A DNA stretch of 46,609 bases from Octopus bimaculoides (lineage: Eukaryota): assembly GCF_001194135.2 (NCBI RefSeq), contig NC_069000.1, forward strand, positions 47,435,488 through 47,482,096. Reading direction: 5' to 3'. The notes under the pieces are model-generated. The model made no database searches and was not told where the DNA came from. It worked only from the letters and a program-made list of their open reading frames with translations. Below are positions 12,124-34,160 of this stretch, piece by piece. The first letter of the stretch is position 1, and each line of letters opens with the position of its first letter. The position numbers were made by a program, and so were the translations under genes.

Positions 12124-12163
<40 letters not shown>

Positions 12164-12434
12164 GAGTTACGGAACATAAACACACCGAAACCTCTCGTTA
12201 AGCAGTGGTGGGAGGATAATCACAGACATACACACACGTAAATATACACACGTATATATATATATATGTATACAACAGGCTTCTTTCAGTTTCCGTCAAC
12301 CATATCCACTCATAAAGCTTTGGTCAGCCCAAGGCTATAAAAGAAGACACTTGCCCAAGGTGCCACACTGGGACTGAACCCTGAACTTTGTGGTTGGGAA
12401 GCAAGTTTCTTACCACACAGTCATGTCTGTGCCT
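11940..12434 (-). mobile_element. SINE family B copy with partial internal duplication
   Basis: Homologous to 9961-10332; the ctaag(c/t)tacg..taaac..acc segment occurs twice, separated by (CA)n. Confidence 0.8.
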
Positions 12435-14554: not shown

Positions 14555-14859
14555 ACGGTTGGGTAGAAGACAGATGGATAGGGTTAACATAGGTGACATA
14601 AAACATTAAGTAGTTAACTAGAAGTTCTAAGAGTTAATATATTTGTGATCAAAGGATTAGGGGAAATATTACCTTACTTGGAAACAGGTGTGGATTGGTG
14701 ACAGGAAGAGCATCCAGTCATAGAAAATTTACCTCAACCAATTATGACTGACTCATGCAAGCATGGAAAAGTGGATGTGAAAACAACGATTATGTATGTA
14801 CATATGTATATTTATGTGTGTAAATATTTGTGTGTATATATATATATATAGTATAGATA

Positions 14860-14890
<31 letters not shown>

Positions 14891-15786: not shown

Positions 15787-15836
<50 letters not shown>

Positions 15837-17029
15837 GTATGTGTAATATTTGCAATGACCCCCCGCACTCCCAAGTTTTATCAGTCCCCTGATGTGGTGT
15901 TATGTCCTTGGTCAGCACCCACGATGGAGCAGGAGAAAGAAAGGTTGCCAATAGGGAGTAATTGTCAATCTTCCTTAAAAGCCATTTTGCCTTCTTGAAC
16001 TTTACCCCTCCATCTTCTCTCCCCAGCCCCTCGGGGGTAGAATCCTCAGGTATCTCCTCCTCCATAGAAGCAACTTTCAGGTTGGATTCCCAGGCATGAC
16101 CGAGAGACTCTCTGACGATCAAATGCTTGAGATGCTACATTACTGTGCCAGTACCTGCAACTCCAGCTTCCTGCTGACCATCACTTGTCAATACACCTCC
16201 AACACATAACTCCGCTTGATTCACTGATATTTCATTAACATCCAGAATTAGAAAAACACAAAATATTCCGTTACTGCCCTTGTGATAGAAAATTTGTTTT
16301 GCCAACATTCATGGCTGTTCCCTTTTTCAGACTAGAGAAAAGAGAACCCACAGCTGCCCCGTTTCAGCCACAACTGACATCATCTCACAAGAGACAGCTC
16401 TTCTTTTCTTCCAGATTTAACTTTTTGCTACACTTTTCCTTCTGCCATTTATCATCAATGAGCAAACCAGGTCTCTGTATATTTACCTCCAGCAGGGAAG
16501 AGGCGATGGGCTTCCTGTCTGCATCTCTAAAAGATACATCAGTAACATTCTGATCAGTTTTTTTGTTTTTTTTAAATTTTTTGCTTTTACCAGGAATATA
16601 TTGCTCAACGATATCAAAATATCGTCATTGGTTTAAAGACCTCATTTCTATGCTTGCGTGGGTTGGATGCGGGTTTATTGAAGCAGACTTTCTATGACCA
16701 GATGCCCTTCCTTTCATCAGCTGACGCCTGTTTCCAAGCAAAATAACATTTCCCCATGATCAGACATATTTTTGCAGAAGATTGAAATTAAAAACACCGT
16801 TTAGATGACAGTCACACTCATTTACAACTATCATGCGATGTCAAGATAAGGACACACACACACACACACATGCACTTCTTTCAGTTTCCATCTACCAAAT
16901 CCAATTTCAAGGCTTTGGTCGGCCCAAGGCTATAATAGAAAACAGTTGCCCAAGGGTTGCTGCTCTGTGGGACTGAATTCAGAAGCATTTGATTGAGAAA
17001 AATGCTTCTTACCACACAACCATGTTTAT

Positions 17030-17195
17030 ATATGAGGGGGGACCTAAAAGATTCTGGAGTTTTGCAATATTATTTTATTCACTTAGTTTTTTATGTTTAC
17101 ACTTTTATTGTCTTCAAAGTATTCTTTGTTTTGAAGCAATGCATTCGTCCAGACATGCTTTCCATTGTCGGAAGCATTGTCGGAAGAACTCTGGT
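17030..17195 (-). mobile_element. Mariner 3'-terminal fragment
   Basis: Minus strand CFRQWKACLDECIAS / EYFEDNK (W..C..C...G.YFE-like C-terminus); terminus tatgagggggacctaaaag resembles a mariner TIR end with TA. Confidence 0.5.
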
Positions 17196-17469
17196 AAAGT
17201 GTACACATGTATACTTTACACACAAATGTGTGTGTGTCTATACACACACACACACACACATATATATAAATGAGCACAAATAGTACATAAATAAAGCCCT
17301 CTCCACACAATCTGCACTTCCTCAACAGGAAGTAGAAGGGACATAACCTAAATACTTAAACATTCACTAACTTCCTGTTTTATTTCTTATCAACATTTTC
17401 TATAAATTTCACCTGAATCCTCTTTATTTGAAAACTAAATATGTTGTTGGTGCTGTTGTGCATATACAT

Positions 17470-17605
17470 ATAATCTTTCACCTTGCTTCTTAATGGAGTG
17501 ATAACTTCTTCGCTCTTTAAATCTCATGAACCATCCTTGACTTGCCTTGAACTCCACATCTTTCACATCTGAATATTTTTTCTTCAGGTCCTCAAACAAA
17601 GACAA
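17470..17605 (-). mobile_element. pogo/Tigger (CENP-B-like HTH) transposase fragment
   Basis: LSLFEDLKKKYSDVKDVEFKASQGWFMRFKERRSYHSIKKQGE matches the FxASxGWFxRFKxR...GE signature of Tc5/Tigger HTH domains; truncated at the adjacent RTE-derived insertion. Confidence 0.8.
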
Positions 17606-17606
17606 T

Positions 17607-17937
17607 GAGTGTAGTGGGTGCTTTTGCGTGCCACTGGCACGAGGGCCAGTCAGGCTGTACTGGTAATGGCCACACTCAAATGGTGCCACTTTCTTTACGT
17701 GCCACCTGCACAGGAGCCAGTCCAGCGGCACTGGCAATGACTTCGCTCAAATATTTTTTTACGTGCCACCAGCACAAGTGCCAGTAAGGTGACGCTGGTA
17801 ATGATCATGCTCGAACGGTGCTTTTTACATGCCACCGGCACAGAAGCCAGTCAGCTGCTTTGGCAACGATCACGCTTGGACGGTACTCTTAGCGCTCCAC
17901 TAGCACGGATGCCAGTCATTGAATTTGATTTCGATGA
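17607..17937 (-). mobile_element. RTE-derived 3' UTR copy abutting the Tigger fragment
   Basis: Reverse complement of the repeat-unit region of 21840-22170. Confidence 0.8.
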
Positions 17938-17964
17938 TGGTGATGATGATGATGATATATATGG

Positions 17965-18220
17965 GTGGAAGGGCATCCAGCTGTAAAAGCCTTGCCAAAA
18001 CTGACCTCATAGCCTGTGCTTCTGCCATGTAGAAGGCACTAAGTCCACCTTGCTAAGTGGTTGGTGTTAGGAAGGGCATCCGGCTGTAAAAATCCTGCCA
18101 AAACAGTCACAGAAATCTGGTGCAGGCTTCTGCCTGGCTGCCTCTTGTGAAACCATTCCACCCATGCCAGCATGGAAGGCAGGTATTAAATGATGATGAT
18201 GATGATGATGATGATAATGA
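17965..18220 (+). mobile_element. Short elements sharing the RTE 3' terminus, with (GAT)n tail
   Basis: ggaagggcatcc(a/g)gctgtaaaa...cccatgccagcatggaa...aaatgatgatgatg. Related copies at about 14690-14790 (+), 16640-16850 (-), 29495-29650 (+) and 37390-37520 (+). Confidence 0.7.
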
Positions 18221-18935
18221 TATGCATATATACACACACATACACTTTACATAACAGCAGCTTGATTGTTATATAGTAGAAAGGAACTTTTGGCTTGTTG
18301 CACCCTTCTTTAATCCTATATGTATCCCATCAGGCCATTGTTCAACACTTTATATAAGTTAGTGAGGGTGGGGGAGGGAGGGAAGATCCATGGTCTTTGC
18401 AGGTCGTACACCCAAACCCGTCGTTAAACAGCAAGGAAAGGAGGACACATTACCTAGTGGAGTCCAAGATACACTTATATCTGAATAGAATGGACACAGG
18501 TAGAGCATCTTTGATTGACCTGAGACTAAACAACAGTAGGGACTTGTGTGAAGGCTGGGGTGATCCTTAAATGCCAGTCTTCCCCTACAGAAGGAGGGGC
18601 CTCCACTCTGACATTTTATCAAGGGTGTTCCAGAAGTTTTTGTAATTAGTGAGAAATGTCAATAAATCACTGACACACACATGCTAACACACACACACAC
18701 AGACAAATACATACACACACACACACACACTAACATATACACACACACATGCTAATATCCACACACTAACACTAACATGCTCACAGTTTACTCTTTGCTT
18801 TTGTCACTCACGCATCTACATTAGACCGCATTGCTGATGGCGATGGTGCTGGTGCTGGTCGTCACATGTCCACTGATGATATTTTCTAAATGTTTAATAA
18901 CAATGTGTATTGTGTCTTGATTTCTGCAGTGAGGA

Positions 18936-19600
18936 ATTATTATTATTATTATTATTATTATTATCATTATATGAAAACTCACAGCTTATTTTGCAGGGTA
19001 TGATGGAGTCCACAGCCAGCAGACTAAGGGGACACTTATTTTACTGGTGATGCTTCAAGAACCCTGCCAAGAATTCTTTCAGTTCCAAGCAATGCTGATT
19101 TTTGTAGGCGTTCTACCTTCGCATTTCCGCCAATCTTCTTCAGCCATGTTGGTAGTTGAGTGCTGATACTTCCAAAGTCCACCAATTACCTTTGCTATCA
19201 CGTCTACTCTCCTCATTGACCACAACCTTCGTATTTCACATTCCAAAGCGTCGTAGCTGTTTTTATTTTTTCTTCTTCTTTCACATTGATCCTCTTGTCA
19301 CTGGGACATGCTATGTCGATTACTACACACGTTCTGTCTTTTTCATTCACCACAACAATGTCCTGTTTCCTATGTCTGGTCAGGTGATTGCACTGGATTT
19401 GGCAATTCTCATTCTCAGTGACTCTTTCTGGGGTTTGCTCATACCACGTCTTTGCTCTTTGCAGGCCGTGATTCCCAGAGCTTCCAATGGATCGTTTGTG
19501 TCTGTATTGTGCCAATTTGAGGCATTCACTAATGAAATGTGTGAATGAAATATGGCATATACTCATTTTTGTTTTTACATTTCATTGTTTGTTTACATCT
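18936..19600 (-). mobile_element. 3' fragment of a restriction-like-endonuclease non-LTR retrotransposon (R4/Dong-like) ending in (TAA)n
   Basis: HFISECLKLAQ (CCHC finger remnant), WYEQTPERVTENE, HRKQDIVVVNEKDRTCVVIDIACPSDKRINVKEEEKI (degenerate PD..D-EK RLE motif), C-terminal LQKSALLGTERILGRVLE, then a short UTR and a (TAA)n tail at 18936-18970. Confidence 0.85.
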
Positions 19601-21224
19601 GACTTCTTGATACAAAGAATCAGTGCTGGCTTATAGAGTTCTATAGAATACCTGTAGAAAAAAAAATTTTAAAAAAAACATAACAAAATAATAAAGACGA
19701 GTGTTTTAGTGTTGGTTGTTAGTCACAACATTTTGGCTTGAAGAAGCTGGAAGATTGAATCGTTGAAATATTATGACTCTAACAACCATGAAGAAGACTC
19801 TAATCTTGATATATCAGAATATGATAATGACTATGATGATGATTATGATGATAATGTGTAAAAAGGTATGTGAAAAAGATCAAAGAGATTATAACGAGAA
19901 GTGGTGAGGTTTATGACAGACACAATAGAGAGACGGACTCAATTTTGCAGCTCACTGAAGCTTGGCACTCCATTAGAATTATTATTATTATTATTATTGA
20001 ATCTGTCATTTATAAAAATGCTCCACAATATATTTGAGTTTGTGTAGGGATATGTGTGTGTAGGAGGGGGTTTCTTTTCATGTGTGTTGGCATGGATAAA
20101 GGCAGGTGTACTCGGGTGTGGTGTGTGTATTTAATGTGGAAGTTATCTATGTGAGTACCTGAAGGAAGGAAGGGGTATCCATGCATGAATGTCTGTAGGG
20201 AGGAGGGAGATGTGTGTGTGCGAGAGAGAGAGAGAGAGAGAGAGGAGAGCGAGTATGTAGTTATGTGTCAGCTTCTATAAAAACAAGGAAATATGCAAAT
20301 ACACACACACACACACACGCATGCACACTGACAAACACACACACACACACACACACTTGTCTCTCATTACAGGTTTCTGAAAGTTGATGTAAATTATATT
20401 TCTGTTGTTCACTCATTCCAGCTGATGTCAAGTCCCTAATTCCCTGTGTCCCCTAACAGGACACTGCCTCTACCCCTTCCCCCAACTGTTGTGTTCAAGA
20501 CTTGGCAGAAACAGAAGGTATTTGAGCTCTAAACAATTACTAAACCCCTGTTTAAGGGTACCCTAACTCCACCCCGTGTACCCTCTCTACACACATTATC
20601 AAATCCTTCCGTCTTAAGAATAAGGAAAGTCACTTTGGTTAGTGTAGTCCTAGATGTACTAATATATCTAGAACTATATCTAAAATACTTGTCTCCTGTT
20701 AAGCTGTGTCCTCTCTTTGGGTTGTCTAACCACTACTACAATGGTCCCTGCTCTTCTGAATCTGTTACCTGTTCACCTAAGAGGAGGGACATTGCCCATA
20801 ACAACTGAAGATATTCCAAGATTGATGTGGTGGTGTTCAGCTTGGCCAGCGAAGGTAGTGGTTAGTGACTGTGGGTTTTGTGGTTTAACCCATGGTCAGT
20901 CCTGATCCAACACACCTTACAATCAAAGGTGTTCCAGCTATGACCTCTTTACTTGGGCTAAGTGTACCTAGAACTACATTATCTGATGTGTTTTTCTTGC
21001 TGTTTAGCCCCAGATCAATGCTGATCTCACAGACTTATGATCTAAGATGTTCCAGCCTATCTTTTATCTATGCACAGTGTATATATATATATATATATAT
21101 ACTCCTTGGTTTTTTAAGCCTCATACTTGTTCTATCAGTCTCTTTTGCTGAACTGCTAAAATACAGGGATGTAAGCACATCAACACCAGGTCAAGTGATG
21201 GCAGAAGAGATAGACAAACTCAAA

Positions 21225-21269
<45 letters not shown>

Positions 21270-21531
21270 GTGTTGACCTACATGTATATTTGTGTCTGTG
21301 TTTGCCCCCCACCCCACCATCACTTGACAACCGATGTTGGTGTGTTTATGTCCCTGTAACTTAGCAGTTCAACAAAAGGGTACATTAGAACAAGTACCAG
21401 GCTTACAAAGAATAAGTCCTGAGGTTGATTTCTTTGACTGAAACCCTTTAAGACAGTGTGCTCCAGCATGGCCAGACACAAATGACTGAAATGTGTAAAA
21501 GAGTAAAAAAATAGAATATATATATGTTGAT

Positions 21532-22293
21532 ATGGTCATGTGGCGAGAATGGATGAGGATAGCTGTGTGAAAAAGTGCCACACCCTAGCGGTTGAGGGTA
21601 CCTGTGGAAGAAGTAGACCCAGAAAGACCTGGGATGAAGTGGTGAAGCACAACCTTTGAACATTAGGCCTCACTGAGGCAATGACTAGTGACCGAGTCCT
21701 TTGGAAATATGCTGTGCTTGAGAAGACCCAGCAAGCCAAGTGAGACCATAACCCATGGTCTTTACCAGGGGTGTAGCCAGCCCACTTATGCGTACCTTTC
21801 CTTCATTGGACACTAAACTCTGCTTGCGAAGATCTGTTGAGGCTAGTGAAATTGAAATCAAATTCGATGACTGGCATCCGTACTAGTGGAGTGCTAAAAG
21901 CACCATCCGAGCGTGATTGTTGCCAGAGCAGCTGACTGGCTTCTGTGCCAGTGGTACGTAAAAAGCACCATTTGAATGTGATCGTTACCAGCGTCGCCTT
22001 ACTGGCATTTGTCGGTGGTACGTGAAAAAATATTTGAGCGAGGTCGTTGCTAGTGCCACTGGACTGGCTTCTATGCAAGTGGCACGAAAAAAATTCCATT
22101 TGAGAGTGGCCGTTGCTAGTAGTCTGACTGGCCCTCGGGCCGGTGGCACGTAAAAGCACCCACTACACTCTCGGAGTGGTTGGCGTTAGGAAGGGCATCC
22201 AGCTGTAGAAACTCTACCAGATCAGATTGGAGCCTGGTGCAGCCATCTGGTTTGCCAGTCCTCAGTCAAATCGTCCAACCTGTGCCAGCATGG
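21532..22293 (+). mobile_element. RTE-clade LINE 3' end (RT C-terminus plus 3' UTR with internal ~65-bp repeats)
   Basis: YGHVARMDEDSCVKKCHTLAVEGTCGRSRPRKTWDEVVKH is the RTE C-terminal GHV.RM...G.R.RGRPRKTW motif. It is followed by four ~65-bp repeats and the conserved ggaagggcatccagctgtagaaactct...tccaacc end. Confidence 0.85.
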
Positions 22294-23348
22294 TAAAAAC
22301 TGCATAGAAACCCTTCTGGTTTCAAATCTTGCTGAGGTCAACTTTGCCTTTTGCTCCTTATGGGTCAATTAAATAAAGTGCCAGTCGAGTCCTGAGTTCA
22401 GTGGAATTGACTACCCCCACACCTTCAAATTTTAGGCCATTCTACACACTTATTAAAGCATGTATGTATGTGTGTGTGTACATACACATATTTAACTGTA
22501 AAGCTACATAAGTGACTCAAGGTCAGAGAGTTTCTTGTGTTGCATTTAGCAAAGAGAGAGAGACAGACAGACAGACGGACACTGGAAATGTGAGGTTATG
22601 CCAGTATTTCATCCTGGGTCGTCGTGTTGTGATGTGGGCTGCAAGTTTATTAAAATATTAAAAATAAAAACCATCCAGTAGCAAATTGGCCTTCATGAAG
22701 ATCTCCCCACAATGATAAAGAAAAGAAAGCTAAGATGGAATGGCATTTAACAATATCCATTGGCATGCCAAGACCATGTTCGAAANNNNNNNNNNNNNNN
22801 NNNNNNNNNNNNNNNNNNNNNNNNNNNNNNNNNNNNNNNNNNNNNNNNNNNNNNNNNNNNNNNNNNNNNNNNNNNNNNNNNNNNNNNNNNNNNNNNNNNN
22901 NNNNNNNNNNNNNNNNNNNNNNNNNNNNNNNNNNNNNNNNNNNNNNNNNNNNNNNNNNNNNNACAAGGAATGGATGGCTAAATTGTTAGCAGAGATCTGA
23001 GATCTGGTACACAAAGCTGTGACTCATTGAAGTGATTTGTGTACAGTGAGGCACAGCGACACTCCTGTGACACCATCAGGAGTTGCCAGTTCAAGCAGAG
23101 GAGTGTGTGTGTGTGTGTGATGTGTCTGCAATGTGTATAAATATATACCTGTGTGTGTGTACAAATATGCACACACAATGGACTTCTCGTTGTAAGGATG
23201 AACACCTGCTTTCTTTCAGTCTTTCAAGGATATTATATTCAATGGCAGTGTGTGTGTGTGTGTGTGTGTGTAATGTGTGTATGTGTGTAGGCTTATTTCC
23301 TGTCCCATAAAGGCCAGTAGATAGTGAGTATGCAATGACTGCCATAAA

Positions 23349-23575
23349 CATCATCATCATCATCATCATCATCATCGTTTAACGTCCGCTTTCCATGCTA
23401 GTATGGGTTGGACGATTTGACTGAGGACTGGTGAAACCGGATGGCAACACCAGGCTCCAATCTAATTTGGCAGAGTTTCTACAGCTGGATGCCCTTCCTA
23501 ACGCCAACCACTCAGAGAGTGTAGTGGGTGCTTTTAAGTGTCACCCGCAGGAAAACGGCCACGCTCGAAATGGTG
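23349..23575 (-). mobile_element. RTE-derived 3' end with (ATC)n tail, truncated by gap
   Basis: catcatcatcgtttaacgtccgctttccatgctagtatgggttggacg... is the reverse complement of the family 3' end. Confidence 0.85.
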
Positions 23576-24741
23576 NNNNNNNNNNNNNNNNNNNNNNNNN
23601 NNNNNNNNNNNNNNNNNNNNNNNNNNNNNNNNNNNNNNNNNNNNNNNNNNNNNNNNNNNNNNNNNNNNNNNNNNNNNNNNNNNNNNNNNNNNNNNNNNNN
23701 NNNNNNNNNNNNNNNNNNNNNNNNNNNNNNNNNNNNNNNNNNNNNNNNNNNNNNNNNNNNNNNNNNNNNNNNNNNNNNNNNNNNNNNNNNNNNNNNNNNN
23801 NNNNNNNNNNNNNNNNNNNNNNNNNNNNNNNNNNNNNNNNNNNNNNNNNNNNNNNNNNNNNNNNNNNNNNNNNNNNNNNNNNNNNNNNNNNNNNNNNNNN
23901 NNNNNNNNNNNNNNNNNNNNNNNNNNNNNNNNNNNNNNNNNNNNNNNNNNNNNNNNNNNNNNNNNNNNNNNNNNNNNNNNNNNNNNNNNNNNNNNNNNNN
24001 NNNNNNNNNNNNNNNNNNNNNNNNNNNNNNNNNNNNNNNNNNNNNNNNNNNNNNNNNNNNNNNNNNNNNNTATATTACAAACTGACAGCCTCAACAGATT
24101 GATCAATCTGAAGCTCAGTTAAAACAGGTCCACAGTAACATCAAACTCAAAACCATACTTGCAAAAACCTATTTAACTATTCAGGTTATGTCTGCACCTT
24201 TTATTTTCTTAAAATTATTCTCAAATAGAGAAAACTTTAAAAAAGCCTTTCAAACTTATTTTTATTTCCACATCTCATCTGCTACAAACTGGAGGTCAGT
24301 TTAAAATAATCTTTAAAAACCAGTAATTTTTTAATTTAATTTTGTTTTTATTAATACTTCTCTATTAAGACCACAGGTTACTTCAGTCAACAGGGCACTG
24401 TAAACTGTTGTAACCAGGAAAAGTTTGAAGTTTTGTCAGGCTCAGCACAAATTCCTAACCAAATCCCATTATTTCATTAACTCCAACAACCATCTCATAT
24501 TTTGATAGAAATATCTTTTAACTTACGATTTGAAAATGGTGAAGAGCAGGGATTTTTTTTTTCTTCTATGGAAAATATTTTTATGAAAAGACACTATTGG
24601 ATCAATTGGAATCCTCGTTGTAAGAACCAACAGAATGCCCGTTGCATAATTCATAAGCTTCTCCATGGTCTCCCTATCTTCAGACATTTTCACGTTAAAA
24701 AAAAAATATATATTTTCTAAAAATTTTTTTTTCCTCTTCAG

Positions 24742-24957
24742 GAACTGAATTTTGCTCCGTCCACATCAGAGCCCAGACATTTGCCTGCAATAATGGGAGT
24801 GTGATGTTCATTGAAAAGTTAAATGCCTTAATGGACAGTGATTGGAAATGTCTTCACGATCTCAAGTTTTATTGCAATAAATACCGAAAGTGTAACATGC
24901 CACGTTCTTGTCAGAATGCATCAATAGATGCCAGAATACTTTATGGCTGCATTCCAG
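24742..24957 (+). CDS. Receptor gene, first visible coding exon: degenerate SUEL/Gal-lectin-like Cys-rich domain
   Basis: Acceptor ttttttcctcttcag, donor CAG|gtatgt; 216 nt, phase 1-1. Translates (G)TEFCSVHIRAQTFACNNGSVMFIEKLNALMDSDWKCLHDLKFYCNKYRKCNMPRSCQNASIDARILYGCIP, with 7 Cys and NGS/NAS sequons. C..G.VMFI / C..L..YC....C / YxC spacing resembles SUEL domains. Confidence 0.8.
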
Positions 24958-25230
24958 GTATGTCTCTCTCTCTCTCTCTCTCTCTTTCTGTCACTTGCTC
25001 CATGTCACTGTCTCTTTATCTTTCTTTCCCTCTCTTTGTCTATTTGTGAGTGTGTGTGTTTTTGCTGTCACTTTCTCTCACACATTCATTTCTATGTTAA
25101 CACACACACACACACACACACACATTCATCTGAATTCTGAGACTGTCGTAGATCCTGTAGTATTGAAAACTGTGGATATCAAGAATACAACAATTTTGAA
25201 GTGTCATATGCTTAGCAGGTTAGACACATA

Positions 25231-25266
25231 ATTCATTAAGATTCATTAAGATTCATTAAGATTCAT
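25231..25266 (+). repeat. 10-bp tandem repeat (attcattaag)x3.5
   Basis: Perfect copies read directly. Confidence 0.9.
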
Positions 25267-25417
25267 GACATTTAAATCCCAATGAAACCAGCCTCTGATC
25301 TTCACCATTCCAGGTTCAAACCCACTGCACAATGCTTTAGCTAGTGTCTTCTGTAGCCATAGGTTAACTCTCATAGGTGGAATTTGGTAGACGGAAACCA
25401 TTGCATGTACACATGTG

Positions 25418-25470
<53 letters not shown>

Positions 25471-25503
25471 NNNNNNNNNNNNNNNNNNNNNNNNNNNNNN
25501 NNN

Positions 25504-25520
25504 CGACGCTCTTCCGATCT
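25504..25520 (+). other. Illumina TruSeq adapter remnant (assembly contamination)
   Basis: cgacgctcttccgatct equals the 3' 17 nt of ACACTCTTTCCCTACACGACGCTCTTCCGATCT, directly at the edge of gap 25471-25503. Confidence 0.95.
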
Positions 25521-25720
25521 TATATATGTGTGTGTGTGTATTTCTTTTAAGTTCGTTTATGGGAAACGTTTTTGAGTATGCACTTAATAGCTTGTATGTC
25601 ATTATGTTGGCTACAGTCTAATGATTCCAAATTACAACAGCAGTTTTGTGGGATTGGACTGATTAGTGCCGTTTTAATGTAGGATAAATACAGTAATAAC
25701 AAGCAGAGACACCCAGCATT

Positions 25721-25780
25721 GGTCAGGGTCAGGGTCAGAGTTAGGGTCAGGATTAGGATTAGGGTCAGGGTCAGGGTTAT
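25721..25780 (+). repeat. Interstitial telomere-like hexamer array (TCAGGG/TTAGGG/TTAGGA variants)
   Basis: ggtcag ggtcag ggtcag agttag ggtcag gattag gattag ggtcag ggtcag ggttat: ten hexamers, six GGG runs. Confidence 0.75.
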
Positions 25781-26057
25781 AATGGCATAGTTTTTTATTC
25801 TTTTACTTGTTTCAGTCATGTGACTGCAGCCATGCTGGGGCACCATCTTTACTCGAACGAATTGACCCCCAGGATTCATTCCTTGTCAGCCTAGTAATGA
25901 ACCACTAAGTTATGGGGATGTAAACACAGCAACATCGGTTGTCAAGTGATGGTGTGAGTACAAACACACACACACACACATAAATATACACATATATACA
26001 ACACTTTTCTTTCAGTTTCTGTGTACGAAATCCACTCACAAGGCTTTGGTCAGCCTG

Positions 26058-26393
26058 TATATATACATACATACATACATACATATATATATATATATAC
26101 ATACATATACATATATACATATATACACACACACATATATATATATACATACATACACACACACATATATATACATACATACACACATATATATACATAC
26201 ATACACACACATATATATACATACATACACACACATATATATACATACATACACACACANNNNNNNNNNNNNNNNNNNNNNNNNNNNNNNNNNNNNNNNN
26301 NNNNNNNNNNNNNNNNNNNNNNNNNNNNNNNNNNNNNNNNNNNNNNNNNNNNNNNNNNNNNNNNNNNNNNNNNNNNNNNNNNNNNNNNNNNNN

Positions 26394-26448
<55 letters not shown>

Positions 26449-26550
26449 CTTACATATACATATATATATATACACACACACACTTATTTATACATATATA
26501 TATATATACACACACACACACATATGTACACATATAAACATACATATATG
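26058..26550. repeat. Compound (TA)/(TACA)/(CA) microsatellite spanning a gap
   Basis: Source of the HTYI/MCVY ORFs. Many other simple repeats are present, e.g. (AT)n 1-32, (CA)n 439-495, (GTA)n 7536-7566, (GT)n 43279-43325. Confidence 0.95.
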
Positions 26551-26656
26551 AAGAATAATACTTAAGATTTCGTAAATAGTATTAATTAACATTTCTCCAA
26601 ATAACATGCCTATAAAATACTTACATTAATAGACTTACTGATACACTATAGAGACG

Positions 26657-26739
26657 AACCACCTGTTGTCCGGAATGGAATTGACCAAAGTCCAACCATG
26701 AATATAATTGGTCAGTCCCATTACGGACAACAGGTGGTT
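26657..26739 (+). ncRNA. Pre-miRNA-like hairpin (or tiny MITE) in an intron of the receptor gene
   Basis: 32-bp inverted repeat: aaccacctgttgtccggaatggaattgaccaa pairs with ttggtcagtcccattacggacaacaggtggtt (2 mismatches, 1 G:U), with a 19-nt loop. The structure is seen directly; RNA function is not shown. Confidence 0.35.
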
Positions 26740-27402
26740 GGGTGGCTTTTAAGCTAGCTCCCATGAAGGTCTCTTCATTGGGCCTTGGGCCCAACAATGA
26801 CACTTCATGCTTTGAATGCATATTAAATTTTGTTAAACTACAAAATATTTTCCAAGCAAAGAACAATTTTCATCAAAACAATGATATAATTTGTCAACTT
26901 GGAACTTATTGCAAAGCTGCATAATAAACCACAGTACCACCACCATCGCCACCACATCTGTTATACACACACCATTCAGACTTCTGACACCACCGCCATC
27001 AATACCTTTCACTTCACCACTTTGCCCTCCATTACCATCACCACTGTCTTTCACATCACTTACTCTCACTTCATCTCTCACCTCCTCAGCTGACTTCTAG
27101 TAGTATGTATGTCTCCTGACAGTGAACACATCTTTCACTGAACGTTCATTCATGTACAGTAACAGCAGACATGCCTTTGAACACTGAACTTGTCTTCTGA
27201 TGGTGAACATTATCTTTTGTTAATGAACTTCCAAAAGATATGAATTCATTTTCATGTATTACTTATTTATGAAAGATAAAATATTGTGTCACAATTAACA
27301 GAGAGTTAGTGATATGTTTTAAAATTCATGTCATCTCATTTGTTTCTTTCTATAATTTCCTTTCTTCTTTTAATTTTTGCTTTTGCTTTTTTCATTTGGT
27401 AG

Positions 27403-27714
27403 ATGTTAAGAGTGAAAAAGAACATGTCTGTTCAGGCAAGACAAATTCCAGAGATTTAGAAGACCAAATCTTCCTTGTTACACCACCTAATATGAAAACT
27501 ACTACAAGATGTAATTGGAGGTTGAAGACTCTCACCAATGGAGTATTGATACTGTATGTCCTCAATGCCTCTGACACCAGTCTTTTAACAATTCATCATC
27601 TTAATTCTAATAAACAAAAACAGTTACATCGAGCTTTTGTCATCAATGTCACAGCAAATGAAGCAATAGACCTAACTATCAATCCTATGTCACCGACTTG
27701 GTTAGTAGCAAAAT
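27403..27714 (+). CDS. Receptor gene exon: CUB-like domain
   Basis: Polypyrimidine acceptor ttttttcatttggtag, donor AAT|gtaagt; 312 nt, phase 1-1, in frame with neighbouring exons. DVKSEKEHVCSGK..IFLVTPPNMKTTTRCNWRLKTLTNGVLILYVLNAS..VINVTANEAIDLTINPMSPTWLVAK shows the CUB-like C...(S/T)P...CxWxL pattern and NAS/NVT sequons. Confidence 0.85.
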
Positions 27715-29190
27715 GTAAGTGCACTTTGTCCTAATATCTTTAAAACTGACCTGGTTACTGTTACTTTGTCCTAATATTTTGGAAACTGATTGAGTCACTG
27801 TTTGGTTCCAATTGAGCAGACATGATGAAGCAGTGACCATCCCCTTTTTTAAGGACTCGTCCATATTGGAATACATTATCTAATGTAACCTAGGTGGTAG
27901 TTGCTCATATCAAGGGTGCCTCACTGTATGTTTAGAGGGGTTGTGACTTCTTAGAAATGAAATGTTTGAACCAGTTATGATATTTATAGTTGAAACCTGT
28001 TTTCAAAAGAAATCTTTGTTGGGATTACAATGTAAGAAAGGAGGACATTCTGTTATCAGTGAATAGAAACATGACTGATGATGTAGCAAGGTCCAATAGA
28101 ATTCCATTCTAGAAGTCCTCACCTTCTTTAGTAATTCAACGTGGACAGCCACAGTCAACACAAATGTTTATATATATAGGAGGTCAGTGTCTTATGAGGT
28201 GGGCCCTATCTGAGCAGGACCAGACCAAACATGTTCCAGCCATGAACATTTCATTTATTCCCCTTTTTGTACACCAAGAACAACATTGTCTCAAGTCCTT
28301 CTTGTTTTCAGATACTAAGAGAATTTAGTTGTTATTTCTAGCAAGTCAAATGGCAGCATAGAGACTTACTTGTTTAAGATGCAGGGAAGTCACAGAGTGA
28401 TGTGGTTGTGGCCAGAAAAAATTATATAGAAGGTGGGAGGGAGCGGCTTTAGGTGACTGTGAAGTATCAACAGAGGTGGTTGTATTGGTTGAATTGCTGC
28501 CTGTTCAGCCCGAGGTCATTTCTTATCCAGCAGAAACAAGATCAAAAATGTAGATCCTCAATTTCATGTTATATATATATATCTGGCAATAACGTCAAAG
28601 TGGTTGGGTGGCCTTCATCCTCTACTAGGGGATGGAAATATAACATCTGACTGATATGGCCTTTGATCTTATTGTTATTGTTTAACCCTAGGCTAGCCCC
28701 AATTCCCTGATGAATAAATAATGAGAAATTTGAATTTGAAAAATTGAAATTTTGGGAAAAGACCTAAAGGTTAACATTGCAAAGATCAAGATACCAGTAA
28801 TTGGTTGAGATCCTCTTGACCCAGAGCTTCTAGCATTAAGAAATTACTGTCACTGTTCATACAGTTGGCCGCATGTCAGGGGTAGTGTGACTGAGGGTAG
28901 ACTATAGGGGTCAGTGTAACAATAGGGATTGACAGACAAGATGCAGTCTAGCAATAGGTGTATCCTGATAACTGGCACAAGGCTGTCTTGGTAACACTGG
29001 ATTGCACAAGAACTTGTATAACCATACATTGGTGCCTATCAGAATCATCTGCCGTCTTTTATCCCCTGCAACTATTCACCCTCAACATATAAAACCATCC
29101 AGTCACATACTAACAACTGTTTGATGCCAACCAACTTGCAGACTGCCTTTGGTTTTGGTTTCTTTAAACTCCATTTTGTTCTAATTTCAG

Positions 29191-29304
29191 TGATTCATCA
29201 GAGTGTGAAGGATGTCAGCCTTCAAGATTTTATTTCCTGTCCAGTTTCTGACAAACCTAAAAAAGTTAGAAGCCTTGCAGAAATTTGTCTTGCAACTTTA
29301 GCAG
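29191..29304 (+). CDS. Receptor gene exon: end of ectodomain / juxtamembrane stalk
   Basis: Acceptor ttttgttctaatttcag, donor CAG|gtatga; 114 nt, phase 1-1; LIHQSVKDVSLQDFISCPVSDKPKKVRSLAEICLATLA; keeps the frame. Confidence 0.8.
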
Positions 29305-30940
29305 GTATGATGACCAATTTCTTGGCAAATGGAGCACTCAATACCTCCACAACAGATATTAAAAACTTTTTAAATGCATTCTCATATTTATATTTGTTCC
29401 TATTTTGAATCTTCTGTCAGTCCATTCCATCAAAGAATTGTATAATTCCTCATGATCTGATGTAATGGTACCATGTAGAAAGCACCAGTTGACTTGTAAA
29501 GGGATTGGCAGTTGGAAGGGCTTCTGGCTGTAGAAACCATGCCAAAACAGACAACTGGGACCTGGTGCAGCTCTCTGGTCATGCCAGCTCCTGTCAAACC
29601 GTCCAACCCATGCCAGCATGGAAAATGGATGTTAAATGATGAGGATGATGTGAAATAGAATGGTAGAATGGCAATGTAGCCAGGAGAGAGTAGAGAGAAG
29701 ATGTGAAAAAAACTAGGCAGAAGTTGAATGGAAGTGAAATGGGGTGGATGGGAAGGGCATTGAAGAAGAGAAGCACATGGTACTGGAGTGATTGGGAATT
29801 GTGGGGGGAATGAAGACAGAAAGTGAGCTAACTTAAAATGAAGCATCTTGCTGAAGAAATGACCCCACAACCATCTGAGCTTCTGATAGCAATGGTAAGG
29901 TTTGAACTTAGCACCACAGAAAAACATTAACATGTGTGGGCTACATCTGCCTGGGGTACCTATTTACAGCCAGGTGGACTGGTAAAGATATGAGATCACT
30001 GAGGTGACCCTTGATTGTCTACTTCTTTACTTACCTGGCCAGCTGGAGCTTTCTGTGTGTGTTGCTAATAATTACTTGTATATCAAGCTTATCATCATCA
30101 TCATCATCATCATAATCATCTTTGCTGTATTGAGATATTTGTTAACATTCAAAATATCCCCCCTCCACCATCACCACTACCCCTGCTACTTCATGCTGAA
30201 GCACCAATTTGACATATTTTCTATAATTAGCCCTAATTAATAATCTAGAACCAGCCAGTTAATTGCCGGTGCTAATGATAATCATTGCTGGTTGTCATTT
30301 CTCTTGGAAGAAATATAAAGGAATAGGATGGGGCATGCCTGTGCACTCACTGTTATAGCCCCATGGTGGGACTGGTGTGATGACAAAAGCATCCAGTTAT
30401 AATATATATAAAGGAGTAGGATGGCGGTGGGGAGGTATGCGTGTGTGTGTTGTGTGTGTGTAATAATAGAGGTTCAAACAAATCTCACTTTCAGCTCTTC
30501 ATCAAGCGCATGGCTAACAAGAACCTATAAAAATAGAACAGAGAAGAGGAGACTGGTGAGAGAATAGATGTTTGTTCCATTCGTTTAGAACCGTTTCATA
30601 ATCTTATTAGTTATAGAGTAGATGTTACATCAACATTTACAGACATAAAATATACATATAAACATATATATGCCCGTGTACCCCCCCCCCTATGATGGAC
30701 TCTCCCGTTGTTAGACAATGTATGAGGGTTCAACAATTTCTTACCAAACAACCACACAGATCGTTTGTTTATAGGGATCAAATGTTTGTGTAGACATAAG
30801 CTCACTCCCTCCATCAGAGCAACGTGAAATGAAGTACTTTGCTCAAGAACACAATGCAATGCCTGGTCTGGGAATTGAACCCACGGTCTTGCATTTGTGT
30901 GTGCAACACCCTAACCGCTAAGCCATGCACCTGTGTACAT

Positions 30941-30972
<32 letters not shown>

Positions 30973-30982
30973 NNNNNNNNNN

Positions 30983-31016
<34 letters not shown>

Positions 31017-31727
31017 ATAAAAAGTAACAACAAAAGAATGAGACCTCCATATTAGATAAACAGGGGATTATTTATATATGTTACAATTTAGAACAAGTAG
31101 TAAAAAGTTGTCATTATAGCAGTCGGAGTTTCAAATGTCGGAGCAAAGAGCTACAATGCATTCTCGTTGGCTATTAATGGCAAGAGACGCTATGAAAGAA
31201 AACCGTTGAATAAAAGAGTTATTCTAATAGGTAGGAAAAGTAAAAAAAGAAAAATGATAAAAAATACATGCAACCATATTCTCACAATACATAAACCTCC
31301 AGCGTTCACATGCACATGCGTACATGCACATACAAACATGCATGTACGTAGTCATACATACACACATTTCTCTTATATAAAATAAATAAATTATGTGTGT
31401 TTGTGTAAACCATCTAGGAATCCATAAGTCAGGAAGCAGCTCTATAATATAAATGTTAACAATATCACTTTATGCACATTTCTTGTTTAAACACCAGAAG
31501 CTGCAGTTTTTGTCCAGAGAAAATCCCTTTAAAAATGTACAGAGTTAGAAAACAAGTCTTTAAAGGAAATTTTCTTGGATGCAAAACTGCAGTTTTACGT
31601 TAATCTATTCTCTCTTATTTCAACCCCTCATCCCCTTATCCGAACCATGGACATACATACCCCTACACACACACATGCTGACATGTATATTCTGAGTGAC
31701 CTTTGCCATCAATTTTTCTATTTTCAG

Positions 31728-31803
31728 GCTATAAAATCGCTGTAATTGTGTTATGTTGTGCTGTCCTCATCTTGTTGGCCATCTTGTCAATAATAATCCA
31801 TTG
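31728..31803 (+). CDS. Receptor gene exon: transmembrane helix
   Basis: Acceptor tttttctattttcag, donor TTG|gtgagt; 76 nt, phase 1-2; GYKIAVIVLCCAVLILLAILSIIIH (21 consecutive uncharged, mostly hydrophobic residues). Confidence 0.88.
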
Positions 31804-33262
31804 GTGAGTCCAGTTTTTATTGTATCCCATGGCTGCCACCCTGCAATCTATCCTAGAAAAGGTTGTCTTTGATACAGACAATTGTGAAACCACATTAAAC
31901 CAGTTTTTCTACCCACTCTTGGAGATGATATGGGTGACAAGTGTTGGAGAGTCTTAGAATATGATGGGAGAGCAAATACCTTGATCATAGTTTCATCATA
32001 GAAATAGGAGGAGGATCATATTTATGACCCTACAACTATGAAGTGTCATATTTATGTCTTAGAAATTACGAAAGTCATACTTATGACTATGAGGTGTCAT
32101 ATCAAGACTGTAGGACTATGGGGTGGATGTCTTTTATGAGTTAAGAAGTATTCAGGAGGTGGGAACCATGCAGTGATGTTAGAATATACAAGGGGTTTAT
32201 TCTGTGGCATGGAACTCTAGAAAAAGGCCAGTCTATGACCTTTGAACTCTGCTGGTCAACTTTTGTGGATTTCAGCTCTGCTGAAGCAGGAAGCAAGTTA
32301 TTCTCTAATTATTAAATTAAATGTAATATCAATTAATTGTTTCTCTTCTGTAGTAAATCCTGAACTGTATTTAGATTTGCAGAGAGATGGGCTTCACCAA
32401 GTCTAAAAATGCCTCCAAGGAGGTCCCTTCTGTACCAATAATGTAACTCTTCCAACACTGTCAGGAGTTGAGGGTCCCTGGCCTGGCAGCATTAGTTCTA
32501 TCTGCTCAGTCCACATTATGTAAGCAACCCAGTGCCACACACTCCTGATCATTCACCTAATTCCTTCAGTGTACGACTGACATGTGTACTGAAGGAATGA
32601 GCACAACAAACTCACTGCTCAACAAATTTGTTGCCAAACACACTCATTACTCAACATATTCAGTGCTCAAGGCAACTGCTACTCAAATATGGCTCAATAC
32701 ATTCACACACAGCTCACCACAGTCAATGGACTTGCTGCACAATGCAGTTGTTACTCTTACACCATTAGTGTTCAACACACTCCCACACAATACACTTCCT
32801 ACTCAACACTTTAGCTCTAATGCATTTGCTGCTCAAAACAGCCGATGCTTGTTCAGTGCACTCACTGTTTATCATAAGCACATTCAATAATGTATTTCTA
32901 GATATACTAGAACTACATTATTCAGTGTGTCCTTTCCTTTTTTTAAAACCTTCCCATGTAATCTAAGGGAAATTTGGTTGCAATTTCTTGCAGGTCTAAG
33001 GGGCTGCTTAGAAGCTCCATCTTTGGTTGGCACTGGCTGGTTGTATAGAATAATATTACACTGCACACTTAGAGGTGATTGTTGTAGAGGCTGTTGTAAG
33101 TTAGTGGTAGTTGTGACATCAGTGGTGGTGATTGCAGCGTTGGTGTAAAGAGGATGATGCTGGGACGGTTGATGTTGCTACCCCTACTGCCACCACCTCT
33201 GCAGCAGTAAAATATCCTGCTTCCCCCACACCATCATCTGGTTTCTTCTTCTCTTCCTCCAG

Positions 33263-33376
33263 TTACTGTAAGAAAATCAAGTCTACACAAAGATCTCGAG
33301 ACATGACAGGGAATCGGCCAACATCAACTGTGATTCCATATCAGACGACCCTGATTAATGGCTCCAAGAAGAACAA
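33263..33376 (+). CDS. Receptor gene exon: proximal cytoplasmic tail
   Basis: Acceptor ttcttctcttcctccag, donor CAA|gtaagt; 114 nt, phase 2-2; CYCKKIKSTQRSRDMTGNRPTSTVIPYQTTLINGSKKN, with a basic stop-transfer cluster directly after the TM. Confidence 0.85.
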
Positions 33377-33665
33377 GTAAGTGGAGGTTGACATTGTTAC
33401 AAGTAGTTGCTGGGGGTTGGGGACAACCCTTCTTGAAACTACCTTATTGTGTACATTGGAACTTAATGGGGACATTAACAAAGAGATATTTGTGTGTGTA
33501 TTTATTTACATGAACACAGGGACTGGCAAAGTTGTGAGTTCTAGAAGTTCCCTTGATAGCCATGTGGCTTTTGATGGAGTTCGAGTGCTTGGCACTTTGG
33601 GGCAAATCTTCTAATACATCTATCTCCTGAATGAATTCAGAAGATGGAAACTATACACAGTCTGT

Positions 33666-33701
<36 letters not shown>

Positions 33702-33964
33702 GAGACCCTTGTTGTGATTTCATTCAATGTTTATCAATGAGTGTCACCATCACATAAGCAATGTTCTTCATTTTCAATCTTCCATGGAAACCTGTCTGGC
33801 CATGAAGGAAATATCACAAGGGAAGGTTAGGGGACAAGAACAGCATCAGTGAATTCTGTTTGACCCATGGCAAAGTCGATATCAAAACGATGGTGAATTA
33901 TCTATTTCATTAGCTAATTATTTATTTCTTTGTCTAATTATATATTTTTTGCTTTGCTTTCTAG

Positions 33965-34160
33965 GTTAAATCAATTAAACCACAACGTGTCATCACCCAA
34001 TCATTTCAGAAAAGACAAACACCTGTACGACCACTTAAACCGTTACGACTCATCCTATGCTGTGCGATTTGACCCCAACAAGTCAAAGCAGAACTGGAAA
34101 AGATCTTATGATGATTCTGACTCCGATTCGACCTATGCCACTGTTGGCGAGAACTCGTAG
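33965..34160 (+). CDS. Receptor gene terminal coding exon: Tyr-rich tail with ITIM-consensus motif
   Basis: Acceptor tttgctttgctttctag; phase 2 completes AA|G; KLNQLNHNVSSPNHFRKDKHLYDHLNRYDSSYAVRFDPNKSKQNWKRSYDDSDSDSTYATVGENS-TAG (stop ends 34160). Confidence 0.85.

What the first reader, a model, noticed from the sequence alone, without database searches (positions are those of the whole stretch)
24742..34160. Hidden six-exon orphan receptor: SUEL-like + CUB-like ectodomain, one TM helix, Tyr-rich tail
Seen: six exons with canonical AG/GT sites and matching phases (1-1, 1-1, 1-1, 1-2, 2-2, 2-stop) splice into one open frame of about 342 aa (1028 nt plus one upstream base). No ORF-track entry shows it whole. 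Topology is type I: N-glycosylation sequons before the TM, basic KKIK after it. Known: symmetric phase-1 exons are the hallmark of shuffled extracellular modules. Inference: a lectin-like/CUB cell-surface receptor of a fast-evolving molluscan family, plausibly for immune recognition, chemosensing or neural recognition. I cannot assign it to a named gene.
Basis: partly seen in the sequence, partly recalled or inferred. Interest (0 to 1): 0.75.

Follow-up and report, generated by a model that had tools for sequence, protein, structure and literature searches.

The report
Annotated cephalopod CUB-like membrane glycoprotein gene

Summary
Six + strand exons (24742-24957, 27403-27714, 29191-29304, 31728-31803, 33263-33376, 33965-34160) have AG/GT sites and the stated phases. 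They splice into 1028 nt encoding 341 aa plus a stop.

This product is 100% identical to residues 31-371 of RefSeq XP_014785088.1 (LOC106879878; UniProt A0A0L8G181, "CUB domain-containing protein"). A seventh exon was missed. It encodes the signal peptide and lies 8.2 kb upstream of the window start. All three N-gaps are intronic and hide no exon.

Orthologues occur in O. sinensis, O. vulgaris, Argonauta and at least three further lineages that I take to be decapodiform. One of these is represented by contiguous mRNA-like contigs. Exon lengths and splice sites are conserved, and dN/dS is 0.37.

- **Distribution:** exhaustive searches found no paralogue and no homologue outside this ortholog group.
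- **CUB-like domain:** supported at fold level. The top Foldseek hit is a spermadhesin CUB (E 7e-5).
- **SUEL-like domain:** only a weak lead. hhalign probability is 32%, above all controls, but the domain has 7 rather than 8 Cys and lacks the YGR and DPC motifs.
- **Tail:** three invariant Tyr motifs and an acidic Ser cluster suggest adaptor docking or endocytic sorting.

Function is untested. This is an ordinary, already annotated gene of low to moderate interest.

The parts
1..24741 (+). 3' part of intron 1 of LOC106879878. The full intron is 32,858 nt. Coding exon 1 (signal peptide, M1-Q29 plus the first base of G30) lies 8.2 kb upstream of window position 1.
   Evidence: window position 1 equals L001 19207 (GCA_001194135.2 CM046620.1), and exon 1 is at L001 11001-11088; the exon 1 peptide is not found anywhere in the window.
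15016..15022 (+). Candidate alternative first coding exon end (ATGTTTG|gttaag) that would give RefSeq isoform X2 (MF-G-TEFC...), which has no signal peptide.
   Evidence: pattern match; for the X2 sequence (P0007). Not verified with transcripts.
24742..24957 (+). Coding exon 2, phase 1-1. It encodes the whole 7-Cys N-terminal module (T31-P101), including the conserved N47-G-S sequon. The module is weakly SUEL/RBL-like.
25471..25503 (.). Assembly gap inside intron 2, followed directly by an Illumina adapter remnant at 25504-25520.
26260..26393 (.). Assembly gap inside intron 2, flanked by (CA)n and (TA)n microsatellites.
   Evidence: No exon is missing.
27403..27714 (+). Coding exon 3, phase 1-1. 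It encodes most of the CUB-like beta-sandwich (D102-K205), with the C111 and C138 pair and the N156 and N183 sequons.
   Evidence: The same exon boundaries are present in a genomic contig that I take to be decapodiform.
29191..29304 (+). Coding exon 4, phase 1-1. It encodes the last predicted strand of the CUB-like domain (SLQDFISC, C222) and the juxtamembrane stalk.
30973..30982 (.). 10-N assembly gap inside intron 4, within a (TA)n run.
31728..31803 (+). Coding exon 5, phase 1-2. It encodes the transmembrane helix (Y245-H268; the helix ends at C271 in exon 6).
   Evidence: Kyte-Doolittle maximum of 3.5 at residue 249; predicted helix 234-278.
33263..33376 (+). Coding exon 6, phase 2-2. It encodes CYCKKIK (stop-transfer) and the proximal tail, with the invariant P-Y295-x-T-T-L motif at 33336-33353.
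33965..34160 (+). Coding exon 7, phase 2 to stop. It encodes the distal tail: H-x-Y328-D-H-L (34020-34037), then the acidic Ser cluster and S-T-Y364-A-T-V-G-E-N (34110-34157), then TAG at 34158-34160.

Best explanation
The region holds coding exons 2-7 of the annotated single-copy cephalopod gene LOC106879878. The gene encodes a 371-aa type I membrane glycoprotein.

Shown:
- A signal-peptide exon lies outside the window.
- Exon 2 encodes a 7-Cys module of about 70 aa.
- Exon 3 and the start of exon 4 encode a degenerate CUB-fold beta-sandwich that keeps only the first CUB disulfide pair.
- A short stalk, one TM helix and a 99-aa cytoplasmic tail follow.
- The gene is under purifying selection and is conserved from octopods to the divergent, apparently decapodiform orthologues.

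Inferred:
- It probably acts at the cell surface as a ligand-binding or co-receptor subunit, as other single-pass CUB proteins do (neuropilin, NETO, Kremen, DCBLD2, CDCP1).
- The ectodomain more likely binds a protein partner than a sugar, because the RBL sugar-binding motifs are absent.
- The three invariant tail tyrosines (PYxTTL, HxYDHL, STYATV) and the DDSDSDS cluster would couple binding either to phosphotyrosine adaptor recruitment or to clathrin-adaptor-mediated internalisation.
For: - **Gene model:** exact exon and phase structure, and 100% identity to XP_014785088.1.
- **Conservation:** all seven exons have the same lengths and AG/GT sites in the gapless O. sinensis locus. dN/dS is 0.37 overall (N-terminal module 0.21, CUB-like 0.42, TM 0.19, tail 0.27). 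The same CUB-exon boundaries are present in a genomic contig that I take to be decapodiform.
- **Expression in a relative:** the 386-aa orthologue is encoded contiguously on 20 short Logan contigs from several sequencing runs, which indicates spliced mRNA.
- **Topology:** hydrophobic 245-271 followed by KKIK, and four ectodomain sequons.
- **CUB fold:** the AlphaFold ectodomain model has pLDDT 70-84 across the domain. The best Foldseek PDB hit is spermadhesin CUB (E 7e-5, TMt 0.58), and many other CUB domains are among the hits. hhalign against real CUBs scores 28.1, above all 300 shuffles (maximum 25.4; mean 11) and above the reversed control at 9.4.
- **Tail motifs:** invariant in all four full-length orthologues despite 38% overall identity.
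Against: - No functional data of any kind exist, and no paper mentions the gene or its accessions.
- Pfam CUB (PF00431) is not matched. Only a sub-threshold CUB_M02D8_5_2nd hit appears, at E 0.065 in 2 of 7 members.
- The structure models have modest confidence (mean pLDDT 52 and 64), and the alignment behind them holds only 4-7 sequences.
- Foldseek also returns non-CUB jelly rolls (C-CPE, collagen-binding domains) at similar E-values.
- No O. bimaculoides transcript was examined directly.
- The Tyr motifs are short and could be sorting signals, phosphorylation sites or neither.
Confidence: 0.6

Rival explanations
1. It is an endocytic or TGN-endosome sorting receptor rather than a signalling co-receptor. 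Under this reading the YxxPhi motifs (YDHL, YATV) bind AP complexes, and the CK2-type acidic cluster DDSDSDS just upstream of YATV acts as a PACS-1-type retrieval signal, as in furin or the mannose-6-phosphate receptors. The ectodomain would carry a cargo.
For: The YDHL and YATV motifs and the acidic Ser cluster are invariant or nearly so across orthologues. The pairing of an acidic cluster with YxxPhi is a classical sorting signature; this rests on established knowledge of furin and CI-MPR tails, not on a test here. CUB domains are also used by cargo receptors such as cubilin (seen among PDB CUBs).
Against: There is no localisation data. The same motifs fit SH2 docking (S-x-Y-x-x-V is ITIM-like). 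One orthologue gave a weak Pfam hit to the SHP2-interacting adaptor SIT (E 0.036), which points the other way but is below threshold.
Confidence: 0.25
2. The protein is a carbohydrate-binding (SUEL/rhamnose-type lectin plus CUB) pattern-recognition or chemosensory receptor that belongs to a fast-evolving molluscan family.
For: The N-terminal module aligns with real SUEL/RBL domains at C2, C4, C5 and C6, with hhalign score 23.8, P 5e-4 and probability 32%. That score is above all 200 column shuffles and all 100 Cys-fixed shuffles, and above the reversed and kringle controls. The ectodomain is the fastest-evolving part of the protein (CUB-like dN/dS 0.42).
Against: - The two motifs that define sugar-binding RBL domains, (AN)YGR(TD) and DPCxGTYKYL (PMC3269628), are absent. 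The module has 7 Cys in about 70 aa instead of 8 in about 95.
- There is no Gal_Lectin Pfam hit at E<=10 and no RBL structure in the Foldseek top 50.
- There are no paralogues and no bivalve or gastropod homologues in a 1.84-billion-representative HMMER scan or in a 5.8-billion word-index search.
- dN/dS is below 1 in every mature-protein region.
Confidence: 0.1
3. The model is a gene-prediction artefact or a decaying pseudogene with no functional product.
For: No O. bimaculoides transcript was inspected here. RefSeq isoforms X2 and X3 lack a signal peptide. The locus sits in gap-rich, repeat-rich sequence.
Against: The reading frame is intact in five or more species. Exon lengths and splice sites are identical in O. 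sinensis. dN/dS is 0.37. An apparently decapodiform relative yields contiguous mRNA-like contigs.
Confidence: 0.03

Closest known systems
Single-pass CUB-domain co-receptors (neuropilins, NETO1/2, Kremen1/2, DCBLD2/ESDN, CDCP1)
   Same: All are type I membrane glycoproteins with a membrane-distal CUB-fold module and a short signalling or sorting tail. Kremen and Neto2 CUBs are among the significant Foldseek matches. CDCP1 and DCBLD2 likewise pair degenerate CUB domains with Tyr-motif tails; that point is established knowledge and was not tested here.
   Different: There is no sequence-level homology to any of them. This protein has only one CUB-like domain, which lacks the second CUB disulfide. 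It has no LDLa, FA58C, MAM, kringle or WSC domains. The weak neuropilin C-terminal hit (DUF3481, E 0.02-0.03 against a cut-off of 28.5 bits) covers the TM segment and is below threshold.
Spermadhesins (PSP-I/PSP-II, aSFP): minimal single CUB domains
   Same: They are the best structural match for residues of about 102-222 (1spp_A: E 7e-5, TMt 0.58, 106 of 109 columns aligned; 1sfp: E 3.8e-4).
   Different: Spermadhesins are secreted mammalian seminal proteins with both CUB disulfides. Sequence identity is 12-13%.
SUEL / rhamnose-binding-lectin (RBL) domains in membrane receptors (latrophilin/ADGRL, EVA-1/EVA1C, PKD1-like)
   Same: Both are N-terminal Cys-rich alpha/beta modules on a membrane receptor. 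hhalign places the octopus C45, C66, C74 and C80 on RBL C2, C4, C5 and C6, including the shared C-x5-C spacing. The predicted order of secondary-structure elements, strands then a long helix then strand, short helix, strand, is compatible with the RBL fold described in PMC3269628.
   Different: The octopus module has 7 Cys rather than 8 (C3 is missing) and about 70 rather than about 95 residues. The YGR and DPC motifs are absent. It falls below Pfam and PDB sequence thresholds, and Foldseek shows no RBL hit in the top 50. It is best described as a possible stripped-down derivative, not a member.

Membership tests
CUB domain (Pfam PF00431 / PROSITE PS01180) | Sequence match to the curated family model above threshold | tested here: not met
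   Pfam scans of 7 orthologues at E<=10 gave no PF00431 hit. The only related hit was CUB_M02D8_5_2nd at E 0.065 in 2 of 7. UniProt's automatic name 'CUB domain-containing protein' suggests that another profile does match, but I could not rerun it.
CUB domain (Pfam PF00431 / PROSITE PS01180) | A beta-sandwich (jelly-roll) fold of about 110 residues, superposable on solved CUB domains | tested here: met
   AlphaFold ectodomain model with pLDDT 70-84 in this region. Top Foldseek PDB hit is 1spp_A (E 7e-5, TMt 0.58), and there are 29 hits at E<=1e-3 including many CUBs. Caveats: model confidence is moderate, and other jelly rolls score similarly.
CUB domain (Pfam PF00431 / PROSITE PS01180) | Profile-profile similarity in register with the CUB N-terminal half (SP-x-YP ... 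C-x-W-x-I ... strand) | tested here: inconclusive
   hhalign of A4 against 8 real CUBs gave probability 40%, P 2.9e-4, score 28.1 over 54 columns. None of 300 shuffles reached it (mean 11, maximum 25.4), and the reversed control scored 9.4. The three divergent (apparently decapodiform) orthologues carry FLVSxSYPR / FLISPTYPR followed by C-x-W-R.
CUB domain (Pfam PF00431 / PROSITE PS01180) | Four conserved Cys forming C1-C2 and C3-C4 disulfides | tested here: not met
   Only one pair is present at the CUB C1-C2 spacing (C111 and C138, 27 residues apart, compared with 26 in cubilin). There are no C3/C4 equivalents.
SUEL / rhamnose-binding lectin domain (Pfam Gal_Lectin PF02140) | Sequence match to the family model | tested here: not met
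   No Gal_Lectin hit at E<=10 in any of 7 orthologues. The PDB profile search found no RBL chain.
SUEL / rhamnose-binding lectin domain (Pfam Gal_Lectin PF02140) | About 95 residues with eight half-cystines paired C1-C3, C2-C8, C4-C7, C5-C6 (PMC3269628) | tested here: not met
   There are seven conserved Cys in about 70 residues (C34, 45, 66, 74, 80, 86, 99). In the hhalign register the RBL C3 has no counterpart.
SUEL / rhamnose-binding lectin domain (Pfam Gal_Lectin PF02140) | The YGR motif and the DPCxGTYKYL motif (sugar-binding residues) | tested here: not met
   All 9 real RBL domains in A5 keep Y-G-R and D-P-C-x-G-x-Y-K-Y-L invariant. The octopus family has EKL-NALMD and (R/A/T)(S/V)C...RILYGC at those positions.
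SUEL / rhamnose-binding lectin domain (Pfam Gal_Lectin PF02140) | Profile-profile or fold similarity to solved RBL domains | tested here: inconclusive
   hhalign gave probability 31.7%, P 5e-4, score 23.8 over 48 columns. That is above 200 column shuffles (maximum 21.7), 100 Cys-fixed shuffles (maximum 19.9), the reversed control (10.4) and the kringle control (11.3). No RBL appears in the Foldseek top 50, which is dominated by the CUB part.
Neuropilin (C-terminal TM/cytoplasmic region, Pfam DUF3481) | Match to PF11980 above its 28.5-bit cut-off, and the C-terminal SEA PDZ ligand | tested here: not met
   The score was 14.4-14.7 bits (E 0.02-0.03) in 3 of 7 members and is centred on the TM helix. 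The C-terminus is GENS/GENT/GDIS, not SEA.
ITIM/ITSM-bearing immunoreceptor-type tails | Conserved (S/I/V/L)-x-Y-x-x-(I/V/L) motif that is phosphorylated and recruits SHP phosphatases | not testable with these tools
   S-T-Y364-A-T-V fits the ITIM pattern in the two octopus sequences and the apparently decapodiform sequence (P-T-Y-A-I-V in Argonauta), and H-x-Y328-D-H-L is a YxxL motif. Phosphorylation and SH2 binding need experiments. One sub-threshold SIT hit was seen (E 0.036).

The most novel reading that the evidence does not exclude
This would give cephalopods a private co-receptor, for example for neural or immune cell-cell recognition, with no counterpart in other molluscs.
Probability: 0.15. 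Interest if true: 0.45.

Novelty: new member of a known kind. Interest (0 to 1): 0.22.

Why it matters
The practical result is a correction. This is not an unannotated gene.

Biologically it adds one more uncharacterised, taxonomically restricted single-pass CUB-type membrane protein. Its invariant Tyr-motif tail and single-copy conservation across the cephalopod orthologues found make it a reasonable, though not urgent, candidate for a lineage-specific co-receptor. It opens no long-standing question.

Tried and rejected
- **Exon 1 in the window:** I searched by tblastn, 5-mer scan and Smith-Waterman. It is absent and lies upstream of the window.
- **Pfam:** nothing above threshold on the octopus protein or on 7 orthologues at E<=10.
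- **PDB sequence searches:** profile searches with the whole protein and with the CUB-like part returned only chance hits (5-HT3A, DMAP1, TetR).
- **Full-length AlphaFold model:** too poor to use (pLDDT 52). Its Foldseek hits were generic cupins and CBMs at E>=0.03. I redid the prediction on the ectodomain alone.
- **Remote homologues and paralogues:** the exhaustive HMMER scan of 1.84 billion representatives and a second word-index profile search returned only members of the one ortholog group.
- **Rfam and tRNA scans of the window:** nothing found.
- **Literature:** searches for the gene, protein and sample accessions gave 0 papers. A topical search found nothing relevant.
- **Kremen-like architecture:** considered because Kremen was a 216-column Foldseek hit. 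Rejected because rmsd is 12.5 A outside the CUB part and the N-terminal module scores at background against kringles.
- **Neuropilin relationship:** considered via DUF3481 and rejected as a sub-threshold similarity centred on the TM segment.

Full report
**Observation**

I extracted the six proposed exons and spliced them. They lie on the + strand at 24742-24957, 27403-27714, 29191-29304, 31728-31803, 33263-33376 and 33965-34160. Each is preceded by a polypyrimidine tract and AG, and each is followed by a strong GT donor (GTATGT, GTAAGT, GTATGA, GTGAGT, GTAAGT). The exons sum to 1028 nt and, with one upstream base, translate to 341 aa plus TAG.

**Gaps**

The three N-runs named by the scan's program all fall inside introns: 25471-25503 and 26260-26393 in the intron 24958-27402, and 30973-30982 in the intron 29305-31727. 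They are flanked by (TA)n and (CA)n microsatellites. The first is followed by an Illumina adapter remnant at 25504-25520.

The O. sinensis orthologous locus has no gaps and the same seven coding exons with identical lengths (88, 216, 312, 114, 76, 114, 196) and AG/GT sites. The O. sinensis, Argonauta and more divergent orthologue proteins are colinear across both affected junctions. The gaps therefore hide no coding sequence and do not affect the reading frame.

**Identity of the gene**

A search of 5.8 billion proteins returned XP_014785088.1, [quoted passage not shown]. Its UniProt entry is A0A0L8G181, named "CUB domain-containing protein". It is 371 aa long and 100% identical over 100% of the query. 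An independent annotation therefore uses the same five junctions.

The window is identical to GCA_001194135.2 chromosome CM046620.1. They are encoded by an exon at L001 11001-11088, which is 8.2 kb upstream of window position 1. That exon ends ...CAAG|gtaaga, which supplies the "one upstream base". Window 1-24741 is therefore the 3' part of a 32.9-kb first intron. The gene is not hidden, and it has seven coding exons rather than six.

**Conservation and expression**

Orthologues are:
- O. sinensis XP_029647326.1, 90% identity.
- O. vulgaris CAI9737282.1. This model skips the N-terminal-module exon in frame.
- Argonauta hians GAB1602041.1, 56-57% identity.
- A 386-aa protein at 37-38% identity, plus two further related sequences. 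Their samples carry no species names. I take them to be decapodiform cephalopods from their divergence alone, and that assignment is an inference.

The 386-aa orthologue is encoded as one uninterrupted ORF on 20 Logan contigs of 1.4-2.6 kb from several sequencing runs. This is what spliced mRNA looks like. A genomic contig of a related species carries the CUB-exon orthologue bounded by ...acag|AACCTG and ATTGAAT|gtaagt, the same boundaries and phase as the octopus exon.

Nei-Gojobori dN/dS between O. bimaculoides and O. sinensis is 0.37 overall (dS 0.134). By region it is 0.21 for the N-terminal module, 0.42 for the CUB-like domain, 0.19 for the TM region and 0.27 for the tail. This is a functional gene under purifying selection.

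**Family size and range**

I ran an exhaustive HMMER profile scan of 1.84 billion cluster representatives and a second word-index profile search at E<=1. Both returned only members of this one ortholog group, one locus per species, with no paralogue and no homologue outside the group. "Fast-evolving molluscan family" is not supported. As far as sequence methods can see, the gene is single-copy and confined to cephalopods.

**CUB-like domain (residues ~102-222)**

Pfam gives no PF00431 hit. The only related result is a sub-threshold CUB_M02D8_5_2nd hit in 2 of 7 orthologues. PDB sequence searches are negative.

The full-length AlphaFold model was poor (pLDDT 52), and its Foldseek hits were not significant. 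An ectodomain-only model built from seven sequences reached mean pLDDT 64 and pTM 0.57, with 70-84 across this domain.

Its best PDB match is the prototype CUB structure, spermadhesin 1spp_A (E 7e-5, TMt 0.58, 106 columns). Kremen, TMPRSS6, aSFP, meteorin, Neto2, C1r, ADAMTS13 and PCPE-1 CUBs follow. Related jelly rolls such as C-CPE and collagenase collagen-binding domains score similarly.

I then collected real CUB sequences from PDB and ran hhalign. The result was probability 40%, P 2.9e-4 and score 28.1. The alignment is in register with the canonical SPxYP...CxWxI...strand region. Column shuffles gave 11.3 +/- 2.4 with a maximum of 25.4, Cys-fixed shuffles reached at most 20.1, the reversed profile scored 9.4, and the cross-control against SUEL scored 9.0.

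The three divergent, apparently decapodiform orthologues retain FLVSxSYPR or FLISPTYPR followed by C-x-W-R. Only the first CUB disulfide pair is present (C111 and C138). I accept "CUB-like fold" and regard strict family membership as unproven.

**N-terminal module (residues 31-101)**

This module is encoded exactly by exon 2. It has seven invariant Cys in about 70 residues.

According to PMC3269628, RBL/SUEL domains are defined by about 95 residues, eight half-cystines paired C1-C3, C2-C8, C4-C7 and C5-C6, a YGR motif and a DPCxGTYKYL motif. Nine real RBL domains taken from PDB keep both motifs invariant. The octopus family has neither motif.

hhalign nevertheless aligns 48 columns. It places the octopus C45, C66, C74 and C80 on RBL C2, C4, C5 and C6, with probability 32%, P 5e-4 and score 23.8. 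That score exceeds all 200 column shuffles (maximum 21.7), all 100 Cys-fixed shuffles (maximum 19.9), the reversed profile (10.4), a kringle control (11.3) and the CUB cross-control (9.5).

No RBL structure appears in the Foldseek top 50, which the CUB part dominates. "SUEL-like" is therefore a statistically visible lead, not a demonstrated relationship. If the module does derive from an RBL, it has lost the sugar-binding residues, so protein binding is more likely than lectin activity.

**Membrane segment and tail**

The strongest hydrophobic stretch is 245-271 (YKIAVIVLCCAVLILLAILSIIIHCYC), followed by KKIK. AlphaFold predicts a helix across it.

The 99-residue tail is predicted to be disordered but carries blocks that are invariant across 38%-identical orthologues: STQR, V-x-P-Y295-x-T-T-L, H-x-Y328-D-H-L, and D-S-(D/E)-S-x-(S/P)-T-Y364-A-(T/I)-V-G.

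YDHL and YATV are YxxPhi motifs. S-T-Y-A-T-V also fits the ITIM pattern. The acidic Ser cluster resembles CK2/PACS-type sorting signals. These comparisons rest on established motif definitions and were not tested here.

**Mechanism**

What is shown: a conserved, selected type I glycoprotein with a two-module ectodomain and a motif-bearing tail.

What is inferred: it binds an extracellular partner through the N-terminal and CUB-like modules, and it couples through its tail tyrosines to SH2/PTB adaptors, to clathrin adaptors, or to both. This is how other single-pass CUB proteins work (neuropilin, NETO, Kremen, DCBLD2, CDCP1).

The main rival is a cycling cargo or sorting receptor. The lectin motifs are missing, there is no gene family, and there is no sign of diversifying selection.

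**Novelty and score**

The gene model already exists in RefSeq and UniProt. No paper mentions it. It is a new, uncharacterised member of a known kind: single-pass CUB-type membrane proteins. Its taxonomic restriction to cephalopods is mildly interesting. I score interest at about 0.2.

Noticed in passing
window 25504-25520: An Illumina adapter remnant (CGACGCTCTTCCGATCT) sits directly after the 33-N gap. It is an assembly or gap-closing artefact retained in the public chromosome sequence, and it is intronic.
   Followed up: partly
window 43892-46168 (- strand): An intronless 758-aa ORF lies convergent to the receptor gene. It has TPR repeats (Pfam TPR_1 E 8e-10, TPR_2 E 9e-8) and is also called as a gene in the public annotation of the locus. 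Its identity was not pursued.
   Followed up: partly
window 15016-15022 (+ strand): ATGTTTG|gttaag could be the alternative first coding exon of RefSeq isoform X2 (MF-G-TEFC...). That isoform, like X3 (which starts at M51), lacks a signal peptide, so both may be non-productive or prediction artefacts.
   Followed up: partly
O. vulgaris protein P0005 (CAI9737282.1), corresponding to window exon 24742-24957: The O. vulgaris model joins the signal-peptide exon directly to the CUB-like exon, skipping the phase 1-1 N-terminal-module exon in frame. This is either real exon skipping or an annotation miss.
   Followed up: no
window 4518-4544, 9982-10008, 25812-25838 (+ strand): Three copies of an interspersed SINE-like repeat core (TCAGTCATKTGACTGCRGCCATGCTGG) lie in introns 1 and 2. 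None is expected by chance.
   Followed up: partly
window-wide (13 N-runs, e.g. 3962-4446, 23576-24070, 39138-39765, 41595-42211): The window carries 13 assembly gaps totalling about 3 kb, mostly bordered by (TA)n and (CA)n microsatellites. The same gaps are present in GCA_001194135.2, so the window comes from that assembly unchanged.
   Followed up: yes
protein residues C34 and C222 (window 24753-24755 and 29238-29240): There are ten conserved extracellular Cys: seven in the N-terminal module, the CUB C111 and C138 pair, and C222 after the CUB-like domain. The odd count in the N-terminal module suggests an inter-module disulfide, for example C34-C222. This is inference only.
   Followed up: no
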